IMG/VR virus record: IMGVR_UViG_3300009177_000028
Coordinates: 140,388-204,387 of that record
Reading direction: 5' to 3' (one strand)
DNA length: 64,000 nucleotides
Under the pieces are notes generated by a model. That model searched no databases and was not told the origin of the DNA. It saw only the letters and a program-made list of their open reading frames with translations. A program made the translations under genes and the position numbers. Shown piece after piece: positions 6,241-36,416 of this stretch (position 1 is the first letter of the stretch; the number at the start of each line of letters is the position of its first letter).

Positions 6241-6632
6241 GTAAAATTGTACTTTGTCCCGATCACTATTATAATTGTCCCATTTGTGGGAAGCCCTGCG
6301 ATGTGGTAGAGCAGGAAGGGTTTAATTTACAAATTAGGTTGCAAGGCTCATGCCAGGTATTTTATTGCTACAACCCACTTGTCACAGACCCTTTGCATTA
6401 TTATAGTCACATAGTGGAGAAAACCAATCCTAACAAGCTAGCCTTCCATGAGTTCTCCTTAAACCTAGGGAATAAAAGCGTATTATTCTCCAACAACTTT
6501 CTGATTCAGAAGAGCTTAATTAAGAATAACAAAGACTCTAAGCCTCTCGAATTGGGTTTTGTTATCATGCCAGATTTTCCAAACCTTGATTCTCTGAAGA
6601 AAAAAGTTAGAACTGCCATTACATTTTCATGA
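6237..6632 (+). CDS. Zn-ribbon/FS-tail family member 5
   Basis: CPIC; ends [19 protein letters not shown]. Confidence 0.85.
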
Positions 6633-7726
6633 AAACGATACTTCAACTGGTTGAATCCTGTCAGGATAAAGTAAAAATCCTGGAAGAGATGATTCCTGTC
6701 AAAAAACATCAGAATAGACTGGCCGAGCTTGACGAACGAGTCTCGATGGACGGAGATCTATGGAATGATCCAAGAGCCGCTGCCGCCCTTATGAAAGAAA
6801 GGCAAAAGCTATCAGACCTTCTAGAGACTATGAAGTACTTCCATGATCAGTCTGAATTCTACTCTGAATGCTGGAAGGTCATGCCTAATGAAATGGATGA
6901 AATGGTCCCGGCCATGTCCCTGTTAGAAGCGACCATGGATAGCTTTGAGTTTAAACAGATGCTCAAAGACCCAGTAGATGACAGTGCCGCCATTGTATCT
7001 ATCAACGCAGGCGCAGGCGGCCTTGAGGCAGCCAATTGGGTAACCATGCTACTCCGCATGTACTCCCGTTATGCAGATTCTTATAAATTCAAGGTGGAGC
7101 TTCTAGATATGAAGCCTTCCGAAGAACATAGCGCCATCTGTACAGACTCAGTTTCCATTAGGGTAGAAGGCCCATATGCCTACGGGTTTCTAAAGGGTGA
7201 GGCTGGCGTTCATAGGTTGATTCGTAACTCTCCATTCAATGCTGGGGATGCCCGCCATACTTCCTTTGCGGCAGTAGCCGTCACGCCCGACATTGAAGAC
7301 ACTATTGATATCGTCATTAATGAAAAAGATATAGAAATCACCACCATGAGAGCCTCTGGAGCTGGTGGACAGAATGTCAACAAGGTTGAAAGCGCAGTCC
7401 GTTTGAAGCACTTACCAACCGGCATAGTTATCAACTCTCGTTCTGAGCGAGACCAGCATACCAATCGTCGTTTAGCCATGAAGATGTTAAAGGCTAAGCT
7501 ATATGATTTAGAGATGCGCAAGAAGATGTCCGAGAAGGAAAAATATCTGATGAGCATGTCGGATAACGCTTTCGGAAACCAAATGCGTACCTATACTTTG
7601 ACCCCCTATCAGCTTGTCAAGGACGAAAGAACCGACCATCAAGTAAGGGACGCCGACAGCGTCCTAGATGGTGATATCCAAGGGTTCCTTATCTCTTATT
7701 TGCGTTTTAGAGATAAACTATTATAA
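6629..7726 (+). CDS. prfB: peptide chain release factor 2 (no programmed frameshift)
   Basis: 365 aa; [24 protein letters not shown] (SPF = RF2 specificity motif), [22 protein letters not shown] (GGQ). Confidence 0.96.
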
Positions 7727-13896: not shown

Positions 13897-14236
13897 AGTG
13901 TCTCAGAAGCTCTTGGAGCCCTGCTATATCGAATGGCTTCTTGAGGTAGGTACCTGGTTTGAATTCCTTGTCGAGATCGGCAGAGGCACTCATAACCACG
14001 ATGGGGGTAGAGTTCAGTCCCGCCTTCTTGGCGGCCACTAGAAACTCTCGTCCGCTCATGATGGACATCATCAGGTCAAGCAGGACCAAGCGGGGATGGT
14101 GGTCTTGGAGCCAGTTCAGGGCGTCTTGGCCGTTGTTGCAGGAGGCCATTTCCCACCCACTGTCCTCTAGGACAAAGCCCAGCACTTCTCGGAGGTCGAG
14201 GTCGTCATCCACAACCAGCACTTGAGGTTTATCCAC
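13889..14236 (-). CDS. stand-alone response regulator receiver (CheY-like)
   Basis: VLVVDDD, LVLLDLMM (phospho-Asp), IVVMSA, LKKPF; GTG start 14236 after SD-like AAGG. Confidence 0.92.
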   Translation of the reverse strand: MDKPQVLVVDDDLDLREVLGFVLEDSGWEMASCNNGQDALNWLQDHHPRLVLLDLMMSIMSGREFLVAAKKAGLNSTPIVVMSASADLDKEFKPGTYLKKPFDIAGLQELLRHFM

Positions 14237-14241
14237 AACTT

Positions 14242-15396
14242 CTACCTTTCTTCCAAAACGCCGCTCATGGGCAGGCACAACCTGAAAACAGACCCAGGCC
14301 CATTAGGTGGGTCGTGAATCTCGATCCGCCCGCCAAGGCTCTTGGCGGCCTCTCCGGCGAGCCAAAGGCCAATCCCCATCCCGGCGTACTGGTCACCCGA
14401 GACGGCTCGCTCGAACCTCTGGAAAATGCGCTTGCGGTCTTTCTCAGGCACACCAATGCCATAGTCCCTCACATCGACCACAACCCAGCCGTCTACATGA
14501 GCTACATTGATATCAACAGGTTTTCCACAACCATATTTCATCGCGTTGTTGACCAGATTGGTCATAATCTGCTCAACCTTACTGACATCCCAAGTGCCGC
14601 GAATGCGCACTTTTGGCAAGTCAAGGCGAATCTCAATTCCCTGCCGTTTTGCCAAATCGTCATTCCTGAGCACAGTCTCTCGGATGACCTCACACACATC
14701 CGCATCTTGGAACGTCACTTGCGTGGGACTGGAGCGCCGTGAGACCTCTAGCAGGTCGCGTACAAGAGCGTTGAGCTTTTGTCCAGACCTCTCCACCGCT
14801 CCCAACCTCCTCAGAATCTCTGCCCTTGACAGCTCTTCCTTTGTCAATTTCTGCACCAAGTTCTGCGATGTCAAAAGAATACTAGAGATTGGCGTTTTCA
14901 ACTCATGAGCTGCCACTGAGATAAAGTCCTCTCTGATACTAATTGCCTGCTTGAGCTGCTCTCGATATTGAGATAGCTCAGTTATATCAACAAAGGAGAC
15001 GATTCCTTTGCCATCCTTCCCATGAGCTGGAGGGAGAAGCGCACCCTGACAGAGAAAGGTTCGCTTGTTGCCGGTCTCGGCGCAGGTCCAGTTAATCTCA
15101 TAGGCGGTAAAGGTCTCACCTCGGGCCACCCGTCTGGAGGGGTAGTCCCTTTCGGCAATTTGACTCCCATCGTTCTCGAAAAGCCCGCCCCGCCATCTTG
15201 CCTCATAGAGGCGAAAGGCTTCCGCATTCTCTTCGATACCGGCCGGCTCCACCTCTGGAACGACGTATTTGAGCGCGGTAGCGTTCGCATACAAGATCCG
15301 TGCCGTGTCCAGCTCGACTACAATAACTGCACTGGGAAGCGTATTCAGTAGCGCTTCCATCCACTTACGATGAGCCTGCTCTTCGAGTGTTATCAT
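14242..15396 (-). CDS. PAS-domain sensor histidine kinase
   Basis: PAS-like LNTLPSAVIVVE..ILYAN; H-box AHELKTP; N-box NLVNNAMKY; G1 DYGIG; F-box IFQRF; G2 GMGIGL; GC higher than flanks. Confidence 0.93.
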   Translation of the reverse strand: MITLEEQAHRKWMEALLNTLPSAVIVVELDTARILYANATALKYVVPEVEPAGIEENAEAFRLYEARWRGGLFENDGSQIAERDYPSRRVARGETFTAYEINWTCAETGNKRTFLCQGALLPPAHGKDGKGIVSFVDITELSQYREQLKQAISIREDFISVAAHELKTPISSILLTSQNLVQKLTKEELSRAEILRRLGAVERSGQKLNALVRDLLEVSRRSSPTQVTFQDADVCEVIRETVLRNDDLAKRQGIEIRLDLPKVRIRGTWDVSKVEQIMTNLVNNAMKYGCGKPVDINVAHVDGWVVVDVRDYGIGVPEKDRKRIFQRFERAVSGDQYAGMGIGLWLAGEAAKSLGGRIEIHDPPNGPGSVFRLCLPMSGVLEER

Positions 15397-15528
15397 GCGG
15401 TACCCCTCAGAGACTGTATGACCATGTCTCAGCAAGACGCAAGCACAATCGCCCAGCAAAAATCATGCCATGTTGCCTTTTGCCCCACCTGTGGTTAATT
15501 TTCCATCAGGAACTGGAATCTGAATTTT

Positions 15529-15942
15529 ATGAACTGCCCACTCTGCCAAACACCGCTTTCTATTGATGCTAGCGATGTGTATAAAGATCATCCAACTTAT
15601 AAATGTCCCATTCAAGTTAGTGGAGACGAATATACTCATTCCACTCATTACATCAAATACTTTTCGGCAGATTGGACCTACTCCCATTACAGAGAAGAGG
15701 CTGTCCTCCCACCCTACCGATTGATTAATTATTATAATTTTCGACAGGGCAAGAGTGATTACTCTGCTATCCAGGAGTATAAGTTTGTCAAGCATGCCCT
15801 CCAAAAGAATGGTCAGGTCAAGCGCTTCCCTTGCTTCGACCGATATAAGTTTCAAACGTTGATGCGCTTCGATCAATGCCTCTCCATCCCAGATAGTGAA
15901 CACTTCGTCAATCGAATCAAAACCCTCTTGGTCTTCTCATGA
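15529..15942 (+). CDS. Zn-ribbon/FS-tail family member 20
   Basis: CPLC; ends FVNRIKTLLVFS-TGA. Confidence 0.88.
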   Translation: MNCPLCQTPLSIDASDVYKDHPTYKCPIQVSGDEYTHSTHYIKYFSADWTYSHYREEAVLPPYRLINYYNFRQGKSDYSAIQEYKFVKHALQKNGQVKRFPCFDRYKFQTLMRFDQCLSIPDSEHFVNRIKTLLVFS

Positions 15943-16298
15943 GAACTTGTCCATTATGTAATAAAACTCTAATTAAGCAATCGGCCCAAGATGCTTGTGG
16001 GTACCAAGAGGATTGGTATTGTCCCGATGAGCTTCGTTTGGCCTCGGGACGTAAAGTCAATCACTATCGAGAATATCCTGAATTAGGATACACCGATATA
16101 TACTTACCGCCCTACCGCATCCGCAATCAAGATGGTCAATCCAAAATTGGTTATCTCTCCCAGTACAAAACTAAACGAAGAGTTCGTACTACTAGAGGGA
16201 AATACTATTTCAAAACCATCATCACCTGCCCACAACTCCACCCAGATACCGAAGAGAAACTTCTTAATAGAGTTAAACTCCTCCTATTAATATCATGA
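15939..16298 (+). CDS. Zn-ribbon/FS-tail family member 21
   Basis: CPLC; ends LLNRVKLLLLIS-TGA. Confidence 0.85.
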   Translation: MRTCPLCNKTLIKQSAQDACGYQEDWYCPDELRLASGRKVNHYREYPELGYTDIYLPPYRIRNQDGQSKIGYLSQYKTKRRVRTTRGKYYFKTIITCPQLHPDTEEKLLNRVKLLLLIS

Positions 16299-16675
16299 TG
16301 AATGGATTCAATCAATATCTTTGCGACTTTTGCCAGCAACCTTGCAGACGATCCACTGGAGCTAAAGAGTATGGGAAACATGCCCGATGGCAACGCTGCC
16401 TCTCATGCAAAGTCTCCTACGCCATTAGCCTAACAGGGCAAGTCAAATGCCGAATCTTTCGAGGCCCTGGAGAGGATGAATTCTATCAACTTAGAATCAA
16501 TTACAAAGAGAATATTTCTACCATCTGCTTCCTTAAAAAGGATAGTTGGATGTATAACAACCGCAAACAAACTACTTATAACTCAACCCAAATAGTTACC
16601 TTGGATCATTGCATTAAAGATATCTCGCCCCAAAATGTCCAAGATAAAATCAAATTGTATATTCTATTCTCATGA
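16295..16675 (+). CDS. Zn-ribbon/FS-tail family member 22
   Basis: CDFC, CLSC; ends SPQNVQDKIKLYILFS-TGA. Confidence 0.88.
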   Translation: MMNGFNQYLCDFCQQPCRRSTGAKEYGKHARWQRCLSCKVSYAISLTGQVKCRIFRGPGEDEFYQLRINYKENISTICFLKKDSWMYNNRKQTTYNSTQIVTLDHCIKDISPQNVQDKIKLYILFS

Positions 16676-17034
16676 TTAAATGTCATTTCTGCCAACGAAC
16701 TTGCCGTAAGGTGGTTCCCAATCAAAAAGAATTTGATCGCACTCCCTACTGGCGCTGCGATTATCATGGCTCAACCGTTGTTAGACAATATTACATCTCC
16801 GTTCAAGCGGAACCACTTTGCCTATCTCATATTGGTTTGATTACCTATTATAAAGATCTTCAATATGGAGCCTATCTTTTCTTTGATGAAGCTCACTTCC
16901 CCCATAAATTTAGAATCGATAAGATTAATCCATATCCACGGACCACTCAAACCGTTATGACCCTGGACTTCCATCCAGATATCACACCGGAAAATGTCCA
17001 GCAGAAACTCCCGACCTATATTATGTTCTCATGA
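16672..17034 (+). CDS. Zn-ribbon/FS-tail family member 23
   Basis: CHFC, CDYH; ends TPENVQQKLPTYIMFS-TGA. Confidence 0.88.
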   Translation: MIKCHFCQRTCRKVVPNQKEFDRTPYWRCDYHGSTVVRQYYISVQAEPLCLSHIGLITYYKDLQYGAYLFFDEAHFPHKFRIDKINPYPRTTQTVMTLDFHPDITPENVQQKLPTYIMFS

Positions 17035-17369
17035 ATTACTATTGCCTCTTCTGCGATCAACGATGCAAGAAAACTCACCCGGAAGCCTCCTGGTGGAAAT
17101 GCAGGCCATGCAAGGTCTCCTTCCATGATGATGACAATGGCCTTTGGAAAATTTCTTTCTCCGTCAACAAACCAGATGCCCTTTATACCTTGGACTTGCT
17201 CCTCAATGAAAATAAAACCGAGCTGTATGTCCTGGGCAGAGATCCCGTTCCCTCCATTATCGATTCCATTATGAATGGAAAGCTAACCATCTCCCTCCCC
17301 TCCATTATGCAAAATGTTAATCCCAATAACGTGGCGGATAAAGTAAAAACATTATTGGTCTTCTCCTGA
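17031..17369 (+). CDS. Zn-ribbon/FS-tail family member 24
   Basis: CLFC, CRPC; ends NPNNVADKVKTLLVFS-TGA. Confidence 0.88.
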   Translation: MNYYCLFCDQRCKKTHPEASWWKCRPCKVSFHDDDNGLWKISFSVNKPDALYTLDLLLNENKTELYVLGRDPVPSIIDSIMNGKLTISLPSIMQNVNPNNVADKVKTLLVFS

Positions 17370-17415
17370 AATTTGCCACGACACAAAGTTTCATTCGATC
17401 CGCCCCATTTCGCGC

Positions 17416-17778
17416 ATGCACCTCAAAACCATTAGCTGCCAACAACGCTGGAGATACTACTGCCCCTTCTGCGACCAAGATATCACCCCGCCCGATGGCT
17501 ACACCATCAGCAGCTTCATCCAATGCCAATTCTGCCCCGTCACCACCAACTTGATCGTCAATGGCTCCATTTCCAATCCCAATATCGCCTATATCCAATT
17601 CCAGCAAGACCAGTTCATGATCGAACTCAATCAGGATGACCAAACCACGGCCCTCTTTGCCGGTCCCGTCAATGCTAGGCTTTCCCAAATGCTCAAGCTA
17701 AGCTACCTGGTCCCCGTCAATCCAAACAATTTCCACAATTGGCTAAGCAAGCTGCTCAACCTAAAAGCTTTCTCTTAA
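17416..17778 (+). CDS. Zn-ribbon/FS-tail family member 25
   Basis: CPFC, CQFC; ends NPNNFHNWLSKLLNLKAFS-TAA. Confidence 0.85.
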   Translation: MHLKTISCQQRWRYYCPFCDQDITPPDGYTISSFIQCQFCPVTTNLIVNGSISNPNIAYIQFQQDQFMIELNQDDQTTALFAGPVNARLSQMLKLSYLVPVNPNNFHNWLSKLLNLKAFS

Positions 17779-18419
17779 GGCTCTCGATTATAAACCGAAT
17801 CCCCATAAATGCAATAATTCAAATTGCCCATCGGTAAATGCTGATAAACCGCCACTCGCCTCAATGCCTCATAATCCACGCACCTGGCCTCCGCCCAATT
17901 AAACATCGGCTGCATCAAATAGACATCATCATGCTGCGCTCCCAGCAAATGTCCCATCTCATGCAAAGCAATCCCCGTCACCCACTGATTGTACATGCGG
18001 TCGCGAATCATCCACATGCGGTTGCCGCCAATCTCATTGGCCCAAGCTAATGTATACGACTTGCCATGCTTGGTCTTGTCTAACTCCGTTACCATGGAAT
18101 TGCTGCTGTCCGTCTTCATGACCAACCAGCAATTGCCCAATAAACATTGCTTGATAATCTCCGGCTCCATATCAAATCGATAATTAACAACCCGCAACTT
18201 AACATACCCGTTCAAGGCGTAATTCCATTGAGTAATCGCATCGTCAATGGCAAGCTTATCCGCCTCTCCAAAGTTCTTATCCATGTAAATGGAAATAACC
18301 TTCAACGGAACGGGTGAATATCCACCCGCGTTAATATAATGAAACGGCTCCAGCCCTCGATGAGCAAAACATCCAACCGCTAAATACACTGCTAGTAAGA
18401 TTACTAAAAGTCGTTTCAT
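17775..18419 (-). CDS. secreted/lipoprotein metzincin Zn-metalloprotease (matrixin-like)
   Basis: signal/lipobox LAVYLAVGC; HEMGHLLGAQH (HExxHxxGxxH) plus Met-turn YLMQP. Confidence 0.88.
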   Translation of the reverse strand: MKRLLVILLAVYLAVGCFAHRGLEPFHYINAGGYSPVPLKVISIYMDKNFGEADKLAIDDAITQWNYALNGYVKLRVVNYRFDMEPEIIKQCLLGNCWLVMKTDSSNSMVTELDKTKHGKSYTLAWANEIGGNRMWMIRDRMYNQWVTGIALHEMGHLLGAQHDDVYLMQPMFNWAEARCVDYEALRRVAVYQHLPMGNLNYCIYGDSVYNREP

Positions 18420-18431
18420 AAACCATCTCCC

Positions 18432-19196
18432 TTACTTCTTAGATAAATCAGGAGCTGGCTCGTGATACTCTTTCACCATCTTCTTAACTGAATCCAAATG
18501 AACATAATAGTTCATAAATGGAACTCTAGTTAACCTGGAACAAATTCCAACTAGGTTTCCAGAGCTATCAAAAACTCCACCACCAGAATTGCCAAACCAA
18601 ATAGTTGCATTAACCTGAACTACCTTGCCAATTCCTGAACTCTCGTCTCCACGATAAGCAGAAACAGTTCCCTCAGCATGCGTGTAATACATTCCCTTAG
18701 GATGTCCGACAGAATAAACATGCTCTCCCAATGCTGGCATCTCGCTGGCAAATCCAACTGCCTCGTGCTCTGGTAATCCACCAACGTCTGCTTTAATCAA
18801 TGCCAAATCATGATCCGCATCAAAGGCAACTACCTTGGCCTTGTGAATAGCAGCAGGATCATCCATCACTTCCTTGACTTCCTTGCTAGTTACATAGTAA
18901 GTCTTCTCTCCAACTGGATCCGCTCCCTCTTCACGAGCTACACAGTGTCCTGCCGTAACAATCTCGTCTTGGCTAATCCAAACTCCTGTGCAGTGCGGAC
19001 GAATATCCACGCTGGCATTATCAATCTCCCCATTCTCATCCTTGTGAAGAGTGACCTTAAAATGAACTAAAGCTACCGTGCTCTCTCCAATATGCGCATG
19101 TAACGCATCTGGACTCTTCACCGGTGTCTTAAGTGATGAACCACAACCTACTAAGCCTAACACCATCGCTAGTGTAATTACCAATAAACGTTTCAT
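18432..19196 (-). CDS. trypsin-like (S1) serine protease lipoprotein
   Basis: lipobox LGLVGC; triad motifs VTAGHC, HDLALI, GNSGGG. Confidence 0.92.
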   Translation of the reverse strand: MKRLLVITLAMVLGLVGCGSSLKTPVKSPDALHAHIGESTVALVHFKVTLHKDENGEIDNASVDIRPHCTGVWISQDEIVTAGHCVAREEGADPVGEKTYYVTSKEVKEVMDDPAAIHKAKVVAFDADHDLALIKADVGGLPEHEAVGFASEMPALGEHVYSVGHPKGMYYTHAEGTVSAYRGDESSGIGKVVQVNATIWFGNSGGGVFDSSGNLVGICSRLTRVPFMNYYVHLDSVKKMVKEYHEPAPDLSKK

Positions 19197-19309
19197 GCAG
19201 TACGTCCTAAATTTTCAAAAGACTCCCCAATCGAAGCCCAATTAAGAAAAATACCAGATTATCCCCAATTGTTTCCAATATTTCACAAAACTAAGACAGA
19301 TGTAATTTA

Positions 19310-19852
19310 TTAGATTATAGATTGAATCACTTGGTGTAAACAACCCACTGCCTTGGTTCCCCTAATAATAATCCCGGCATGGTAATCATAATCCCCTTGG
19401 TCATTGTAATCATGCCAGCATTCCAATAACTCCCCTGCCCCCATTACCCTGTACATCCCAGCCACGGATGGATCCATTAAATAAACTAATCCATTCTTAA
19501 TTCCTACCAAAACTACATAGTGCCCATCATCCCAAACCTCAGACATCTTAGTCTCTGCCGTATAACTACCCCACGCCTGAATACTCAAGATAACCGTATA
19601 TCCCTCAGCCGTTAATCCCTGTAACTCCTCCAGAGTCATATTAGATTTACTGTAGGCAGTTAATCCATAGTTCCTAGCCCCTGCTATCAATCCTTCCCCT
19701 GAGGTTCCTTCATCGGTGGTCCCCAGTAAATCGTATAGCTCTGGCTCTCGGCCATCCCAAACGCCCCAATAGTATAAACAACTGGCTAAACTAGCTGCCC
19801 CACAACTGTAGTCATAGGCTTGGCGGACTATAGGTAAATAGATTAAGCTCAT
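19310..19852 (-). CDS. C39-like cysteine peptidase (stand-alone)
   Basis: RQAYDYSCGAA (Q-x5-C), GHYVVL, LMDP. Confidence 0.88.
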   Translation of the reverse strand: MSLIYLPIVRQAYDYSCGAASLASCLYYWGVWDGREPELYDLLGTTDEGTSGEGLIAGARNYGLTAYSKSNMTLEELQGLTAEGYTVILSIQAWGSYTAETKMSEVWDDGHYVVLVGIKNGLVYLMDPSVAGMYRVMGAGELLECWHDYNDQGDYDYHAGIIIRGTKAVGCLHQVIQSII

Positions 19853-20230
19853 TTAGATTACTTCCTTTGAGTGGTTGGGGCGCGGTTAGCGCCCTCTCTT
19901 ATGCCAGTCTATCCCGTTAGGTATGGGGTGATTATATCTGTATTGCTACATAGGGTCACATATGGCAACGTATGGTCATATATGGTCATTAATTAGATCT
20001 TTTATAATGGTATAAGATGCTTATTACTTTTAATAAGTGGGAAATGGTGGGATGGGGTGGCATTTTATGGGAAAGTAATATATATTTTATCGTATTGGTC
20101 GTTTTGGTAATGTATATGTTAGTTGGAGATGGCCCACAGGCTGTGTGATTTGGTGTTTGACCCCTGTTTGGGAGGCGCCATCCCACCCCGCACGACAGTC
20201 TCCCACCTTTTTCGGGCGGCTCCAATGTAG

Positions 20231-20265
20231 GTGGTATGAGTTATGCAATATGCAATCATGCCAAC
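20231..20265 (+). promoter_or_regulatory. repeated sigma54-type element, copy 1
   Basis: TGG-TATGAGTTAT-GC (GG-N10-GC) then AATATGCAATCATGCCAAC. Confidence 0.65.
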
Positions 20266-20380
20266 TACATCGTAATCAATGTAGGATAATCTCTTTTATT
20301 TATCTATACTGTGTGATGAATACTTTTTATTATTATCATTCATCACATGTAGTATATTTTTATTTATTAGAGGAATGTGG

Positions 20381-20415
20381 TTGGTATGCCGTTTGCAATA
20401 TGCAATCATGCCAAC
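20381..20415 (+). promoter_or_regulatory. repeated sigma54-type element, copy 2
   Basis: TTGG-TATGCCGTTT-GC; 26-bp perfect direct repeat with copy 1 (20244-20269 / 20394-20419). Confidence 0.65.
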
Positions 20416-20458
20416 TACAGGTAGGATAAGCAGCAGAAAGCCCCTGAAACCTGGGCGG

Positions 20459-20493
20459 TTGGCATGAAACCTGCAATTAGCAAGCGTGCCAAC
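20459..20493 (+). promoter_or_regulatory. repeated sigma54-type element, copy 3
   Basis: TTGG-CATGAAACCT-GC then AATTAGCAAGCGTGCCAAC. Confidence 0.7.
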
Positions 20494-20560
20494 TACCTGG
20501 GCGGGGCGAGTAGGAGGTCCACCTACCCCAAGCGGGCGCCTCTCTCGTGTGTCGAGCATG

Positions 20561-25057: not shown

Positions 25058-25092
25058 GTTGGCATGCTTGCATAGTGCAACATCCATGCCAC
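25058..25092 (-). promoter_or_regulatory. repeated sigma54-type element, copy 6 (antisense)
   Basis: minus strand GTGG-CATGGATGTT-GCA, canonical TTGCA -12 box. Confidence 0.7.
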
Positions 25093-25237: not shown

Positions 25238-26131
25238 ATGAACGTGTATGAGATTGTCACCGAACGGATCATTGCAGCCCTGGAAAAGGGTGTCGTACCT
25301 TGGCGCATGCCCTGGCGTACCCAAGGTGGGAGCGGTCTCCCCAAGAACCTACAGAGTGGGAAGGAGTACCGAGGTGTCAACATCTTCCTACTGGGTGCGC
25401 AGGGGTACGCCTCTCCCTGGTGGGTTACCTACAAGCAGTGTACGGCCCGAGGTGGGCAGGTGCGCAAAGGTGAGAAGGGCACCCCGGTCATCTTCTGGAA
25501 GGTAGGAGATCATAAGACCAAGGTGGGCAAGAGTGGGAAACCGGAGAAGATGTTTATCCTCCGGTACTACACTGTCTTCAATGTCGCCCAGTGTGATGGG
25601 CTGGACTACCCCAAGGAGGCGGTGGTGGAAGCTCCCACCTTCGACCCCATCGAGCAATGCGAGAAGATCGTTCTCGCCTACAAGACCCTACCCAAGATTG
25701 AGCACGGAGGTGGGCGAGCCTGCTACTCCCCCTCCTTCGACAAGGTGATGATGCCGGAAAAGGAGAGCTTTGGTAAGAGGGAGGAATACTACTCCACACT
25801 CTTCCACGAGCTTACCCACAGCACCGGACATGAGAGCAGGTTGAACCGGGATGGGATCATGAATCCCATTCGGTTTGCCTCACATGACTACAGCTTTGAG
25901 GAGCTGGTAGCAGAATGTGGGGCGGCCTTTCTCTGCGCACATGCGGGTATCTTGGATACCACGCTGGACAACTCGGCCGCCTACATCTCCCACTGGGTGA
26001 GCAAGCTGAAGAGTGAGCCAAGGTGGATTGTGGAAGCCTCAAGTAAGGCAGCTAAGGCGGCTGACTACATCATGGGAGACCTGGTCAAAAAGGAGTCAGA
26101 GTCGGAGGAGTCAAGCGAGGAAGCCGCTTGA
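25238..26131 (+). CDS. ardC: ArdC-family ssDNA-binding antirestriction protein with zincin-like domain
   Basis: GVVPWRMPW, YRGVN, TYKQ..GGQVRKGEKG, YTVFNVAQ, TLFHELTHSTGH..RLNR, YSFEELVAE. Confidence 0.93.
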   Translation: MNVYEIVTERIIAALEKGVVPWRMPWRTQGGSGLPKNLQSGKEYRGVNIFLLGAQGYASPWWVTYKQCTARGGQVRKGEKGTPVIFWKVGDHKTKVGKSGKPEKMFILRYYTVFNVAQCDGLDYPKEAVVEAPTFDPIEQCEKIVLAYKTLPKIEHGGGRACYSPSFDKVMMPEKESFGKREEYYSTLFHELTHSTGHESRLNRDGIMNPIRFASHDYSFEELVAECGAAFLCAHAGILDTTLDNSAAYISHWVSKLKSEPRWIVEASSKAAKAADYIMGDLVKKESESEESSEEAA

Positions 26132-26218
26132 ACCGACATGTCAGGGACTGGGCTGGCCTACTCGGCTGGCTCAGTCTATTATCCTACATCCTCACACACA
26201 AGCCCTGAAAGGACGACC

Positions 26219-26638
26219 ATGAACGACAAGAGACCCTGGAATGAGGGAGGGGAGGAGAAGCCATATAGTGTCTCACTGTGGATACAGGATCCCTCCGACA
26301 TGAGTGACAATGACACATGTATGGCCGGGGAAGACTTCGCCACCGAAAAGGAAGCGCGAATGTGTCTGGCCGACATGAACGCACACTTCAATGACAGGTT
26401 CTACAAGGACGTACCTTATGTCCTGTTGGACGGCCCGAACGACCTACACGAGGTGACAGTGCGCACCCAAGCCCTCAAGCGGATGCAACGTGAGAGGGAG
26501 TGCGAGGACAGGGCGGCAAGGTCGGAGATGGCCATGCAAGCTGGGATGGGTATGGGCATTCATGCCTACAACGACATGATGGGATACGACTCTGAAGAGT
26601 ACGACCCTGACCTACACGGATACCTGCACGAAGACTGA
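26219..26638 (+). CDS. hypothetical protein
   Basis: AAAGGA SD; acidic. Confidence 0.75.
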   Translation: MNDKRPWNEGGEEKPYSVSLWIQDPSDMSDNDTCMAGEDFATEKEARMCLADMNAHFNDRFYKDVPYVLLDGPNDLHEVTVRTQALKRMQRERECEDRAARSEMAMQAGMGMGIHAYNDMMGYDSEEYDPDLHGYLHED

Positions 26639-26667
26639 GCAACCACAACAACCCGAAAGGTACGACC

Positions 26668-26886
26668 ATGAGCGACAACAACGGCAACAAGAGCGAAGGT
26701 AGCATCAAGACCGACAAGCGGAAGCAGTCTCTCTACTTTCCGGAGAGCATGCTCCAAGAGATCAAGGAGGAGGCGGCTCGGCTGGATCGTAGTCTGTCGT
26801 GGGTGGTTCAGCGTGCATGGAAGCTGGCACGCACCGAAGTCAAGAATCTGCCCAGCGTCTCCGACATCGAGACGGAGGACGAGTAA
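26668..26886 (+). CDS. MXAN_4361/MXAN_4362-family (TIGR04563-like) ribbon-helix-helix small protein
   Basis: DKRKQSLYFPESMLQEIKEEAARLDRSLSWVVQRAWKLAR matches the myxobacterial family as recalled. Confidence 0.88.
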   Translation: MSDNNGNKSEGSIKTDKRKQSLYFPESMLQEIKEEAARLDRSLSWVVQRAWKLARTEVKNLPSVSDIETEDE

Positions 26887-26894
26887 TCGTACCA

Positions 26895-26936
26895 CCTACA
26901 CCCTGCCCATTAGTGAGAGCTAGTGGGCAGGAGTAG
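26895..26936 (+). ncRNA. intergenic hairpin family copy H7
   Basis: CCTAC-ACC-CTGCCCATTAG...CTAGTGGGCAG-GA-GTAG. Confidence 0.72.
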
Positions 26937-26970
26937 TTGGCATGCTTGCATGTTGCACATCTCATGCCAC
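26936..26970 (-). promoter_or_regulatory. repeated sigma54-type element, copy 7 (antisense)
   Basis: minus strand GTGG-CATGAGATGT-GC then AACATGCAAGCATGCCAAC. Confidence 0.65.
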
Positions 26971-27004: not shown

Positions 27005-27022
27005 GTGGCACATGACTTGCAT
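27005..27022 (+). promoter_or_regulatory. sigma54-type promoter (sense)
   Basis: GTGGCACATGACTTGCAT, canonical TGGCAC-N5-TTGC. Confidence 0.65.
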
Positions 27023-27079
27023 GTAATTGCATGGTCAATCAAAAGTGCTACAATTGATCAAAAGGAAAAGGAGGTTATC

Positions 27080-27313
27080 ATGTTTGGTATGAACAAGGCG
27101 CACATTGACACCGTCTATCAGCGAGAGGACGACATGTCCGACCTGATGCGCCGATGTCGGATGGCCCTCGACATGGGAGCCTCCAAGGAAGAAGTTCACG
27201 ACATCTGCATCCAAGCGGGTCAAAGTGAGGAACAAGCCTACTTGACCTACATCGCAGCCAAGCTGCTCACACGTGACGAAGCGTGCGAGACTGGCGCCCG
27301 AAAGGTGGCCTGA
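27080..27313 (+). CDS. hypothetical protein
   Basis: AAGGAGG SD, ATG 27080. Confidence 0.75.
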   Translation: MFGMNKAHIDTVYQREDDMSDLMRRCRMALDMGASKEEVHDICIQAGQSEEQAYLTYIAAKLLTRDEACETGARKVA

Positions 27314-32805: not shown

Positions 32806-33221
32806 TGGGAGTTGCTGCACACACCATCCTCATTGTTGAGGATAACAACGACATTCGGCTTCTTTTCACCGCAGTGTTCACCTTATGTGGGATGAATGTT
32901 CTTGCCACCCGCACACTTAGGGATGCATGTCGGGCATTCGAGGCAGGTGTTCAGATTGACGCCATTATGGTAGATTACACATTACCGGATGGTGTAGGTC
33001 CCAACATCTTGACCCTTCTGGGCGACAAGTTGCCTAAGGTGCGAGTGTTGGTAACTGGACACGATATCACACATCCTGGTTTCAGTGAATGCTTCACCAA
33101 ACCAGTAGACATGGGCCTACTTTGTAGGTCGGTTCGTTCAGGATTGGAGAAGGTATACCATGCAACTAGCGAAGCAAGTGGAACATGCGGGCAAGTCGGT
33201 CAAGGTGTTCTACGACCCTGA
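32805..33221 (+). CDS. stand-alone receiver domain protein
   Basis: ILIVEDN, IMVDYTLPDG, VLVTG, FTKPV. Confidence 0.88.
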   Translation: MGVAAHTILIVEDNNDIRLLFTAVFTLCGMNVLATRTLRDACRAFEAGVQIDAIMVDYTLPDGVGPNILTLLGDKLPKVRVLVTGHDITHPGFSECFTKPVDMGLLCRSVRSGLEKVYHATSEASGTCGQVGQGVLRP

Positions 33222-34663: not shown

Positions 34664-35062
34664 ATGTATACTGTTATGATCGTGGAAGATGACGATGATC
34701 AAATAGTCCTACTGTCGGGTCTCATATCCTCCTTTGGATACCGTGTTCTGACCGCTCGTTCCAAAAAAGAAGCTATGTCTATCATTGACTCACATGTCAA
34801 GATAGATGTTCTCTTTACCGACTTCATGCTCGGAGATGGGACGGGAGGTGAGATTCTGGCCGAGATGCGGGAACGTCTCCCACGTATCATGACCATCCTT
34901 TACACTGGTGTAACCAAGTTTCCTCCCAGTCTCAGTGGTGGGTTTGATGACTACCTAACCAAACCTGTCAATACAAGTGACCTTCGCTGCACCATTGCAT
35001 CCTGCTTAGAGGTGCGCACGCAGCGACAGAGTGATGTGAAGAAGAGTGAACGAGCAGCCTGA
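34664..35062 (+). CDS. stand-alone receiver domain protein
   Basis: VMIVEDDDD, LFTDFMLGDG, ILYTG, LTKPV; ends ERAA. Confidence 0.9.
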   Translation: MYTVMIVEDDDDQIVLLSGLISSFGYRVLTARSKKEAMSIIDSHVKIDVLFTDFMLGDGTGGEILAEMRERLPRIMTILYTGVTKFPPSLSGGFDDYLTKPVNTSDLRCTIASCLEVRTQRQSDVKKSERAA

Positions 35063-36032: not shown

Positions 36033-36416
36033 TTGACTACTCCAAACACAAACATCACTAAAGGTACGCTCATGGTGGTTGATGATGATGCAGATAACCT
36101 GGAGCTAATGGAGTTTTCCTTGCTCCATCAGGGTTACGAAGTCATCAAAGCAGCTTCCATGTGCGAGGCCGTGGAAACGTTCCGCAGCAGTCCGTACCCT
36201 ATCCGTGCTCTGATTACCGACTATTGGTTGGGAGACGGGACTGGAGCAGAGCTGGTCACACACCTAGGGGAGAGTGCTCCTAGTGTGAGGATTCTGGTCA
36301 GCGGAAGTTCAGAGATTCGTACCAATAGGACGTTTGATGCTTTTCTGGTCAAACCTGTCCTACCTAATAGGCTTCAGGAGATTCTAGCGGATCTCCTTCA
36401 TGAGAGGGCGGTGTAG
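36033..36416 (+). CDS. stand-alone receiver domain protein
   Basis: LMVVDDD, LITDYWLGDG, ILVSG, LVKPV. Confidence 0.9.
   Translation: MTTPNTNITKGTLMVVDDDADNLELMEFSLLHQGYEVIKAASMCEAVETFRSSPYPIRALITDYWLGDGTGAELVTHLGESAPSVRILVSGSSEIRTNRTFDAFLVKPVLPNRLQEILADLLHERAV

What the first reader, a model, noticed from the sequence alone, without database searches (positions are those of the whole stretch)
26668..26886. Host-captured myxobacterial RHH-like regulator beside a sigma54 element
Seen: 72-aa protein closely matching my recollection of the MXAN_4361/4362 (TIGR04563) family; it is followed within 150 nt by hairpin H7, an antisense element and a sense sigma54 promoter. Knowledge: that family is described as myxobacteria-restricted and of unknown function. 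Inference: it pins the host to Myxococcota and may mimic or poison the host regulator, or bind the repeated operator.
Basis: partly seen in the sequence, partly recalled or inferred. Interest (0 to 1): 0.6.

Follow-up and report, generated by a model that had tools for sequence, protein, structure and literature searches.

The report
Jumbo phage carries host CdbA copy
A soil jumbo phage carries its own well-conserved copy of CdbA, the c-di-GMP-binding DNA-organising protein of myxobacteria whose loss triggers host cell death, which suggests that phages manipulate this poorly understood host pathway.

Summary
The 72-aa ORF at 26668-26886 (+) scores 112.8 bits against TIGR04563 (cut-off 65). The hairpin, the antisense sigma54-like site and the sense sigma54-like site all lie within 135 nt downstream.

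MXAN_4361/4362 are CdbA/CdbB. [quoted passage not shown]

The window protein matches the CdbA crystal structure 6SBW (E 1.4e-22). It keeps all four residues needed for DNA and c-di-GMP binding. Its core (residues 14-55) equals the Polyangiaceae consensus. Its own changes lie in the C-terminal tetramerisation tail.

The gene sits on a tailed jumbo phage (204 kb, about 48% complete), at the end of a unit that starts with an ArdC-like anti-restriction gene. It is old and under purifying selection (dN/dS about 0.16). It is accessory, because more distant relatives of the phage lack it. Homologues occur on 15 IMG/VR viral contigs but in no GenBank phage.

Most likely it is a CdbA mimic that acts on the host nucleoid and CdbA network. 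This function is inferred and not shown. A link to the sigma54 element or to the repeated box is not supported, because the adjacency is absent from the closest relative.

The parts
26668..26886 (+). cdbA-like gene. It encodes a 72-aa ribbon-helix-helix protein of the CdbA/CdbB family (TIGR04563). The predicted strand lies around residues 19-24 and the helices at 26-39 and 43-60. The N-terminus (1-14) and C-terminal end are disordered.
26657..26667 (+). Translation initiation region (AAGG, a spacer, then ATG). The same pattern recurs in front of other genes at 26208, 30294 and 34014.
   Evidence: D6, D9, D10
25238..26131 (+). First gene of the same co-directional unit: an ArdC-like anti-restriction protein (ArdcN + MPTase-PolyVal; phrog_7245, category host takeover).
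26219..26638 (+). Middle gene of the unit: an acidic 139-aa ORFan with no family hit. Its start is chosen from the shared initiation motif and from the gene calls on other contigs.
25058..25092 (+). Copy of repeated box B, 146 nt upstream of the ArdC-like gene. It is the probable 5' boundary of the unit.
26896..26936 (+). Hairpin A, directly behind the cdbA stop codon. It has no U-tract. It is the probable 3'-end, processing or stabilising element of the unit. It is conserved behind cdbA in relative L082 and rebuilt by paired changes in natural strains.
26936..26970 (+). Box B, a quasi-palindrome (TTGGCAT ... ATGCCAC) with inner TTGCA repeats. Its antisense half (26954-26969, - strand) has sigma54 spacing (GG-N10-GC). 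Its sense half is 3 bp too short.
27006..27021 (+). Sense sigma54-type -24/-12 match (TGGCAC-N5-TTGCA), 59 nt upstream of the next gene. It belongs to the downstream gene and not to cdbA.
27027..27054 (+). Alternative sigma70-like reading (TTGCAT, 16 nt, TACAAT) overlapping the same intergenic stretch.
   Evidence: read directly; the consensus scan did not list it
27080..27313 (+). Downstream gene, a 77-aa ORFan with a strong Shine-Dalgarno site. It is not conserved behind cdbA in L082.

Best explanation

Shown:
- It is a full family member.
- It keeps the residues that CdbA needs for both DNA and c-di-GMP binding.
- Its core is identical to the Polyangiaceae CdbA consensus.
- It lies on a tailed jumbo phage, behind an anti-restriction gene.
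- It has been kept by purifying selection.

Inferred:
- It is made early in infection.
- It forms the usual intertwined dimers and tetramers, alone or mixed with host CdbA.
- It binds the same GC-rich sites on the roughly 70% GC host chromosome in preference to the 40-56% GC phage DNA.
- It thereby supplies or re-tunes CdbA activity. This would keep the nucleoid, and the responses triggered when CdbA leaves DNA (c-di-GMP rise; in some myxobacteria the CsdK/CdbS death pathway), in a state that suits the phage.
- Its own substitutions in the tetramerisation tail (K49N, N54S, I47V, V56I in CdbA numbering) may alter the dimer-dimer geometry and hence the DNA versus c-di-GMP switching.
For: Identity:
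- TIGR04563 scores 112.8 bits against a cut-off of 65.
- PDB 6SBW/6SBX CdbA matches at E 1.4e-22, about 69% identity over 55 residues.
- All four are invariant in 19 viral and 80 bacterial homologues.
- Residues 14-55 equal the Polyangiaceae consensus. F50->L is a host-lineage trait: L in 51 and I in 29 of 80 bacteria.
- The predicted helices fit the CdbA helices.

Phage context:
- The low-GC arm encodes a tail sheath, tail fibres, DnaB, helicase, RNR and PhoH.
- Relative G001 has the same two-arm architecture, so the contig is not a chimera.
- The identical protein is on 21 contigs read from several samples.
- The locus is found in runs of at least 13 studies.
- An anti-restriction gene lies two genes upstream.

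Selection:
- Window versus L082 gives dN 0.052 and dS 0.33.
- No differences are listed inside the gene in two natural populations whose flanking genes vary.

Recurrence: homologues lie on 15 IMG/VR contigs, including DTR-complete genomes of 407 and 209 kb. None of these loci shares the bacterial cdbA neighbourhood.

Co-assembly:
- CdbA and CdbB, only about 51% identical, interact in a two-hybrid assay.
- The predicted heterodimer with a Polyangiaceae CdbA gets weak support: ipSAE 0.60 in three runs, best of 3 controls 0.00. That mark was reached by 51 of 78 solved complexes and 2 of 108 mismatched pairs. A score of 0.60 or under was seen in only 5 of those 78 solved complexes and in all 4 mismatches that passed. 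The runs agree in at least 95% of contacts and the partner pLDDT is 71. The pass may reflect memory of solved CdbA.
Against: - There is no expression, binding or host data: no RNA run holds the locus.
- CdbS, the death effector, is reported as not conserved in Sorangineae, the lineage whose CdbA this copy resembles. The anti-death branch of the idea may therefore not apply to this phage's host.
- The tail changes are mild, so a neutral explanation is possible.
- Five more distant RF2-bearing megaphages lack the gene, so it is dispensable for the wider phage type.
- The published CdbA DNA motif could not be recovered as text. Whether phage DNA carries CdbA sites was therefore not tested.
Confidence: 0.55

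Rival explanations
1. Poison subunit. The phage protein co-assembles with host CdbA into defective tetramers. This strips CdbA from the chromosome, disorganises the nucleoid and blocks division, as a host-shutoff device.
For: - The dimer core is identical to the host consensus, while all phage-specific changes lie in the tail that makes the dimer-dimer contacts (tail contacts described).
- N54 is invariant in 80 of 80 bacterial homologues, and also in M. xanthus and in diverse CdbA-type genes. It is S in this phage clade.
- Viral tails in general are highly variable.
- CdbA depletion is lethal in M. xanthus.
- The heterodimer prediction gives weak support: 0.60 against a best control of 0.00, with the calibration counts given in the main explanation.
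Against: - The DNA- and ligand-binding residues are under strict conservation in all viral copies. A mere poison would not need that.
- V53 and D55 of the tail are kept, and the other changes are conservative.
- Killing by CdbA loss takes about 24 h in the published depletion experiments, which is slow for a shutoff.
Confidence: 0.17
2. The phage's own DNA-binding protein. It acts on phage DNA, either as a nucleoid-type organiser of the very large genome or as an Arc/Mnt/CopG-like repressor of phage promoters such as the repeated box B.
For: - RHH proteins are classic phage repressors: weak hits to an Arc-like PHROG and to RHH_1.
- A repeated box lies right behind the gene, and 9 copies lie in the window.
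- Jumbo phages need DNA organisation.
Against: - The DNA-reading strand (KRKQSLYF) is identical to that of host CdbA, so the specificity should be the host's.
- The host site is described as GC-rich and as a direct repeat spaced by 4 bp. Box B is a quasi-palindrome of moderate GC.
- The gene-box adjacency is absent in relative L082.
- CdbA has only minor effects on transcription in the host.
- The phage arms are 40% and 50-56% GC.
Confidence: 0.15
3. c-di-GMP sponge. An abundant early protein that soaks up c-di-GMP (CdbA Kd about 83 nM). This would blunt c-di-GMP-dependent host responses or c-di-GMP-signalling defence systems.
For: [quoted passage not shown]
- Phage sponges for cyclic-nucleotide immune signals are an established principle (own knowledge: Tad1, Tad2, Acb2). 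Bacterial TIR-STING senses c-di-GMP (own knowledge).
- In four other viral contigs cdbA lies beside a calcineurin-like phosphoesterase.
Against: - The same residues serve DNA binding, so their conservation does not single out the ligand.
- The stoichiometry is only 2 c-di-GMP per tetramer.
- No GGDEF or PilZ gene lies in the held half of the genome; EAL was not searched.
- The phosphoesterase may equally be a protein phosphatase.
Confidence: 0.08
4. RHH antitoxin of a toxin-antitoxin pair (BrnA/CopG-like), with the upstream ORF as its toxin.
For: - There is a weak BrnA hit, E 0.0049.
- A small gene lies 30 nt upstream.
Against: - The BrnA score is 17 bits against a cut-off of 60.
- The upstream ORF has no family hit.
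- In L082 the two genes are separated by other genes.
- The TIGR04563 match is overwhelming.
Confidence: 0.02

Closest known systems
CdbA (MXAN_4361) of Myxococcus xanthus; PDB 6SBW/6SBX; family TIGR04563
   Same: - About 69% identity over 55 residues and the same ribbon-helix-helix layout.
- K8, S10, R27 and R30 (DNA and c-di-GMP binding) are kept.
- Y12, P14, M17, W34, K41, A43, R44, V53 and D55 are kept.
- It is of the CdbA type (KRKQSLYFP) and not the CdbB type (KKKLTLYFP).
   Different: - It is encoded by a phage and not in the conserved chromosomal neighbourhood (cdbA, then an alpha/beta-hydrolase, an unknown gene and a YbjN/CesT-like gene).
- It has a longer disordered N-terminus.
- Tail changes are K49N, N54S, I47V and V56I.
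- Q38R, Q28L and F50L are shared with Polyangiaceae hosts.
- No biochemical data exist.
Polyangiaceae CdbA orthologues (e.g. P0025; Sorangium L058, Chondromyces L018, Byssovorax L005)
   Same: 72-79% identity over the full length. Residues 14-55 are identical to their consensus.
   Different: - Nucleotide identity is at most 82%, with dS near saturation.
- N54 is invariant in bacteria but S here.
- K49 is K in 78 of 80 bacteria but N here.
- Viral branches in the tree are many times longer than bacterial ones.
Phage-encoded homologues or antagonists of host nucleoid proteins (own knowledge: SPO1 TF1 HU-like, phage H-NS homologues, T7 gp5.5 and LUZ24 Mip against H-NS/MvaT, T4 MotB)
   Same: The principle is the same: a phage carries or targets a host chromatin protein, often among early host-takeover genes.
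   Different: The protein family is different. None of those is a ligand-regulated (c-di-GMP) ribbon-helix-helix nucleoid protein, and none is tied to a regulated-cell-death pathway.
Phage RHH repressors Arc, Mnt (P22) and plasmid CopG
   Same: The fold is the same, with tetramer-on-DNA binding. CopG is the closest structural neighbour of CdbA according to PMC7156744.
   Different: - Sequence similarity is only marginal: RHH_1 E 0.012, Arc-like PHROG E 0.24.
- Those proteins are operator-specific repressors with nM affinity. CdbA binds more than 500 sites at 0.4-4 uM.

Membership tests
CdbA/CdbB family (TIGR04563) | HMM score above the curated cut-off over the full model | tested here: met
   112.8 bits against a cut-off of 65, profile positions 2-52 of 53. 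The same result comes from the genome-wide scan, where it is the only copy in the contig.
CdbA/CdbB family (TIGR04563) | Ribbon-helix-helix fold like the solved CdbA structure | tested here: met
   6SBW matches at E 1.4e-22. The AF2 model has helices at 26-39 and 43-60, which equal CdbA helices 15-28 and 32-48 after the +11 offset, with pLDDT 88-96 in the core. The strand does not form in a monomer model, as expected for this fold.
CdbA/CdbB family (TIGR04563) | [quoted passage not shown] | tested here: met
   They correspond to K19, S21, R38 and R41, which are invariant in all 99 aligned homologues.
CdbA/CdbB family (TIGR04563) | Tetramer contacts through the C-terminal tail (F50, V53, V56, the carbonyls of A52/V53/D55, and the pocket W34/I42/I47) | tested here: inconclusive
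   W45, V64 and D66 are kept. L61 (for F50) equals the Polyangiaceae state. L53, V58 and I67 are conservative changes. N54->S and K49->N depart from invariant or nearly invariant bacterial residues. The oligomeric state was not predicted or measured.
CdbA/CdbB family (TIGR04563) | [quoted passage not shown] | not testable with these tools
   This needs ITC or DRaCALA, EMSA and microscopy.
CdbA orthologue (chromosomal, essential gene) | Conserved chromosomal neighbourhood in a Myxococcota genome | tested here: not met
   The gene lies in a phage ORFan array. None of the 15 viral loci, nor the window, shares neighbours with 82 bacterial cdbA loci. It is therefore a xenologue and not an orthologue.
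sigma54-dependent promoter (site at 27006-27021) | -24 GG and -12 GC separated by 10 nt, with the consensus TGGCAC-N5-TTGCW | tested here: met
   The match is exact. There are 8 such sites in the window against 0.20 expected.
sigma54-dependent promoter (site at 27006-27021) | A cognate AAA+ activator (bEBP), and conservation of the site in relatives | tested here: not met
   There is no Sigma54_activat domain in the 204-kb contig, which is only about half of the genome. The site and the downstream gene are absent behind cdbA in L082. Similar sites do precede other genes there. Host activators remain possible.
Type II antitoxin (BrnA / CopG-like RHH) | Family score above the cut-off and a conserved adjacent toxin gene | tested here: not met
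   BrnA scores 17 bits against a cut-off of 60. The upstream ORF has no family and is not adjacent in L082.

The most novel reading that the evidence does not exclude
The host CdbA/CsdK/CdbS regulated-cell-death circuit, whose purpose its discoverers call an open question, is a guard that senses loss of CdbA from the chromosome during phage attack. Jumbo myxophages carry their own CdbA as an antidote or decoy that keeps the circuit silent, possibly through a tail-modified version that responds differently to c-di-GMP. That would make phage cdbA a new kind of anti-defence gene and would give the pathway a function.
Probability: 0.15. Interest if true: 0.8.

Novelty: new member of a known kind. 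Interest (0 to 1): 0.5.

Why it matters
CdbA is the only known ribbon-helix-helix nucleoid protein regulated by c-di-GMP. Its essentiality comes from a cell-death pathway whose biological role is unresolved (PMC10313047).

Several unrelated large phages keep a CdbA copy under purifying selection, and here it sits next to an anti-restriction gene. This is the first hint that phages have a stake in that pathway, and it gives a direct experimental handle: express the phage copy in the existing M. xanthus depletion strains.

The gene is also a useful host marker. It assigns an uncultured phage of about 0.4-0.5 Mb, found in soils, rhizospheres and groundwater, to Myxococcota. Very few phages are known for that group.

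Neither the GenBank phage collection nor the searched literature reports a phage-borne CdbA.

Tried and rejected
- **Assembly chimera** (40% GC arm joined to a 50-56% GC arm): rejected. Relative G001 carries a 70%-identical virion protein and the cdbA region at the same spacing, about 137 kb against 140 kb. Independent contigs also span part of the junction.
- **Recent capture from a sampled host:** rejected. Nucleotide identity is at most 82% and dS is 0.7-1.8.
- **Host DNA mis-called as viral:** rejected for this contig, which has a tail sheath, tail fibres and a replication module. It is unlikely for the other viral loci, which share no bacterial cdbA neighbours. Three of them are nevertheless flagged "provirus".
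- **Toxin-antitoxin reading:** rejected (see rival explanations).
- **Scan of phage DNA for the CdbA binding motif:** not possible. The motif is given only in a figure. The text and supplements list only yes/no calls and flanking primers.
- **Expression evidence:** none. No RNA run holds the locus, and the laid runs were contigs only.
- **Family tree for a donor:** unresolved. It has 73 columns and most forks are open. It gives only a weak viral subclade (support 80) inside a Polyangiaceae-type cluster (support 88).
- **Other pathway parts on the phage:** no Sigma54_activat, GGDEF or PilZ domain in the held 204 kb.
- **Host assignment from a second gene:** the search with the RF2-like protein returned only unnamed metagenomic proteins.
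- **480-kb ENA contig carrying a related RF2:** could not be searched because the record is not held.
- **Canonical sigma70 promoters and intrinsic terminators:** not enriched in 20-32 kb.

Full report
**Observation.** The window holds an ORF at 26668-26886 (+) of 72 aa. It matches NCBIfam TIGR04563 at E 4.6e-33, 112.8 bits against a curated cut-off of 65, over nearly the whole model. Pfam sees only marginal RHH_1 and DUF6364 signals, and PHROGs sees nothing useful.

Three elements follow the stop codon:
- A strong hairpin lies at 26896-26936.
- A 35-nt box at 26936-26970 carries a sigma54-spaced GG-N10-GC on its antisense half.
- An exact sense match to TGGCAC-N5-TTGCA lies at 27006-27021, 59 nt before the next gene.

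All these elements are far above chance.

**What the family is.** A full-text search for the locus tags shows that MXAN_4361 and MXAN_4362 are CdbA and CdbB. According to PMC7156744:
- It binds more than 500 chromosomal sites with moderate specificity. The site is a GC-rich direct repeat spaced by 4 bp.
- It bends DNA.
- It binds c-di-GMP (Kd about 83 nM, one per two monomers) and DNA mutually exclusively.
- The K8A/S10A and R27A/R30A variants lose both activities and are inactive in vivo.
- Homologues were not found outside Myxococcales.

PMC10313047 adds that lethality on CdbA loss is executed by the PilZ protein CdbS, which two PilZ-DnaK chaperones stabilise. Heat, and possibly c-di-GMP, triggers the same route. 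The purpose of this regulated-cell-death system "remains an open question". CdbS is reported as not conserved in Sorangineae. "Function unknown" is therefore out of date.

**How good a CdbA is this?** The protein hits the CdbA crystal structures 6SBW/6SBX at E 1.4e-22, with window residue = CdbA residue + 11.
- K19, S21, R38 and R41 correspond to the four functionally proven residues. They are invariant in 19 viral and 80 bacterial homologues.
- Residues 14-55 are identical to the consensus of the closest bacterial homologues, which are Polyangiaceae.
- The apparent loss of the tetramer-centre F50 is a host-lineage trait: L or I in all 80 bacteria.
- The protein is of the CdbA type and not the CdbB type.
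- The changes specific to this phage and its close strains all lie in the C-terminal tail that makes the dimer-dimer contacts.
  - K49N: K in 78 of 80 bacteria.
  - N54S: N in 80 of 80 bacteria, and also in M. xanthus and in diverse CdbA-type genes.
  - I47V and V56I.
- An AlphaFold model gives the two helices where CdbA has them, with disordered ends.

**Where it sits.** The window is the last 64 kb of a 204,387-bp IMG/VR contig that CheckV rates as 48% complete.
- The contig has two compositional arms: about 40% GC for 1-155 kb and 50-56% GC for 160-204 kb.
- The low-GC arm encodes a tail sheath, tail fibres, a virion protein, helicases, DnaB, ribonucleotide reductase, PhoH and a weak PhuZ-like tubulin.
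- The high-GC arm is a long array of small + strand ORFans.
- The junction is not an assembly artefact. A diverged relative from another sample (G001, 202.6 kb) has a 70%-identical virion protein and the cdbA region at the same distance.
- The identical CdbA is on 21 contigs read from several samples.
- The locus occurs in soil, rhizosphere and groundwater runs of at least 13 studies.

cdbA is the last of three co-directional genes. The order is box B at 25058, then an ArdC-like anti-restriction gene (phrog_7245, E 7.8e-80, category host takeover), then an acidic 139-aa ORFan, then cdbA, then hairpin A.

**Evolution.**
- The best 80 genome hits are all Myxococcota, mostly Polyangiaceae.
- The family is present in 118 of 301 sampled genomes of that phylum, usually in 1-2 copies, and in none of 14 control genomes.
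- In bacteria the gene has a conserved chromosomal neighbourhood. That neighbourhood is absent from all viral loci.
- The phage gene is not a recent capture: at most 82% nucleotide identity and dS 0.7-1.8 against bacteria.
- It is under purifying selection within the phage lineage: window versus L082 gives dN 0.052 and dS 0.33.
- Two natural populations show no listed change inside the gene, while the flanks vary.
- The tree is poorly resolved. It groups the window with its strains, L082 and L083 inside the Polyangiaceae-type cluster, and viral branches are long.
- Homologues occur on 15 IMG/VR contigs in several sequence lineages. These include DTR-complete genomes of 407 and 209 kb.
- No GenBank phage record has one.
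- Five more distant relatives of this phage lack the gene. They were identified through a shared RF2-like gene and include complete genomes of 447 and 452 kb.
- cdbA is therefore an accessory gene that has been gained repeatedly or kept selectively, presumably by phages of Myxococcota.

**The neighbouring elements.** Hairpin A is a family of 8 copies with 16 pairs, 6 of them with compensatory changes. Paired changes rebuild it in natural strains. It is kept right behind cdbA in L082. It lacks a U-tract, so it is a 3'-end, processing or stabilising element and not a textbook terminator.

Box B is a quasi-palindrome found in 9 copies, always oriented with the downstream gene. In this phage only its antisense half has sigma54 spacing. 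In L082 the homologous 35-nt element is correctly spaced in the sense orientation in front of several genes.

Sigma54-type sites are strongly enriched, but the held half of the genome has no activator gene. Behind cdbA, L082 has neither box B nor the sense site, and a different gene follows. The closeness of cdbA to the "sigma54 element" is therefore a matter of gene order in this one phage. It is not evidence of a functional pair.

**Mechanism.** The shown facts are the identity, the intact binding residues, a core identical to the host consensus, the phage context next to an anti-restriction gene, the purifying selection and the recurrence in phages.

From these I infer that the protein is made early and forms CdbA-type dimers and tetramers, alone or mixed with host CdbA. 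Three things bear on that inference:
- CdbA and CdbB, at only about 51% identity, already interact.
- The predicted heterodimer with a Polyangiaceae CdbA has weak support: 0.60 against a best control of 0.00.
  - The mark was reached by 51 of 78 solved complexes and 2 of 108 mismatched pairs.
  - A score of 0.60 or under was seen in only 5 of those 78 solved complexes and in all 4 mismatches that passed.
  - The runs agree in at least 95% of contacts and the partner pLDDT is 71.
  - The pass may come from memory of solved CdbA.
- The DNA-reading strand is the host's and the published site is GC-rich. The preferred substrate should therefore be the host chromosome and not the 40-56% GC phage DNA.

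I therefore favour a CdbA mimic that supplies or re-tunes CdbA activity during infection (confidence 0.55 for the whole statement; about 0.95 for the identity alone). The rivals are:
- a poison subunit acting through the altered tail (0.17);
- a DNA-binding protein for the phage's own genome or box B (0.15);
- a c-di-GMP sponge (0.08);
- an antitoxin (0.02).

**Novelty and score.** The protein is a new member of a known, characterised family in a new setting. Phage-borne copies of host chromatin proteins are a known theme, but a phage-borne CdbA has not been reported in the literature searched. It bears directly on an open question about a c-di-GMP-linked cell-death pathway. Interest 0.5.

**Limits.** There is no host link beyond this gene, no expression data and no biochemistry. 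Half of the phage genome is missing. The CdbA DNA motif could not be scanned.

Noticed in passing
window 6629-7726 (+): The phage encodes a class-I release factor of RF2 type (PCRF + RF-1 domains, E 3e-45 and 5e-37). Its closest relatives (64-88% identity) sit on metagenomic and viral contigs of about 430-490 kb, which suggests a clade of megaphages that carry their own RF2. Whether this goes with stop-codon recoding was not examined.
   Followed up: partly
window 13904-15470 (-); 32826-33113, 34673-34993, 36072-36386 (+): The phage encodes two-component parts. A PAS-HisKA-HATPase_c histidine kinase (14242-15459) has a sigma54-type site right at its 5' end (15455-15470) and a stand-alone receiver just downstream (13904-14221). 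Three more stand-alone CheY-like receivers lie in the ORFan array.
   Followed up: partly
whole contig; switch at about window 14000-20000: There is a sharp two-arm composition: about 40% GC for 155 kb of structural and replication genes, against 50-56% GC for the 44-kb ORFan arm. The architecture is conserved in relative G001, so it is real. The cause is unknown.
   Followed up: partly
window 20224-20497, 23574, 24203, 25058, 26936, 31128, 52412; L082 169, 405, 1439, 2333, 3647: Repeated box B is a quasi-palindrome holding two opposed sigma54-like halves. In this phage a 3-bp shorter left half leaves only the antisense half correctly spaced, whereas in L082 the sense half is correct. It could be a sigma54 promoter, an operator or an RNA element. 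Sigma54-type sites are 17 against 1 expected in the window, and no activator gene was found.
   Followed up: partly
window 22479, 22937, 23533, 24162, 24835, 26895, 29335, 31710 (each about 42 nt): Hairpin A family between cistrons, with compensatory stem changes and no U-tract. Together with box B it resembles the intercistronic processing sites of phage early transcripts (own knowledge: the T7 RNase III sites).
   Followed up: partly
contig C1 76927-78288 (outside the window; L114 17928-19286): A weak match to PhuZ-type phage tubulin (phrog_4733, E 1.1e-7). If real, this jumbo phage may position its DNA with a tubulin spindle. No search for a phage-nucleus shell protein was made.
   Followed up: no
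L083 5015-5812, L084 5163-5960, L086 4672-5445, L091 5157-5912 (all - strand): In four other viral contigs the cdbA homologue lies head-to-head with a calcineurin-like metallophosphoesterase (Metallophos, E 1e-12 to 2.5e-19). It could be a protein phosphatase or a nucleotide phosphodiesterase. This is a recurrent partner that the window phage lacks.
   Followed up: partly
window 18432-19196 and 19310-19852 (-): A trypsin-like serine protease and a C39-type peptidase lie side by side on the minus strand, at the edge of the divergent control region that holds three box B copies.
   Followed up: no
window 25238-26131 (+): An ArdC-like anti-restriction protein with an ArdcN domain plus an MPTase-PolyVal metallopeptidase domain. 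It is 76% identical in relative L082.
   Followed up: partly
P0005, P0007 (proteins): Some metagenomic proteins of 115-117 aa contain two CdbA-like modules in tandem in one chain (single-chain pseudo-dimers).
   Followed up: no
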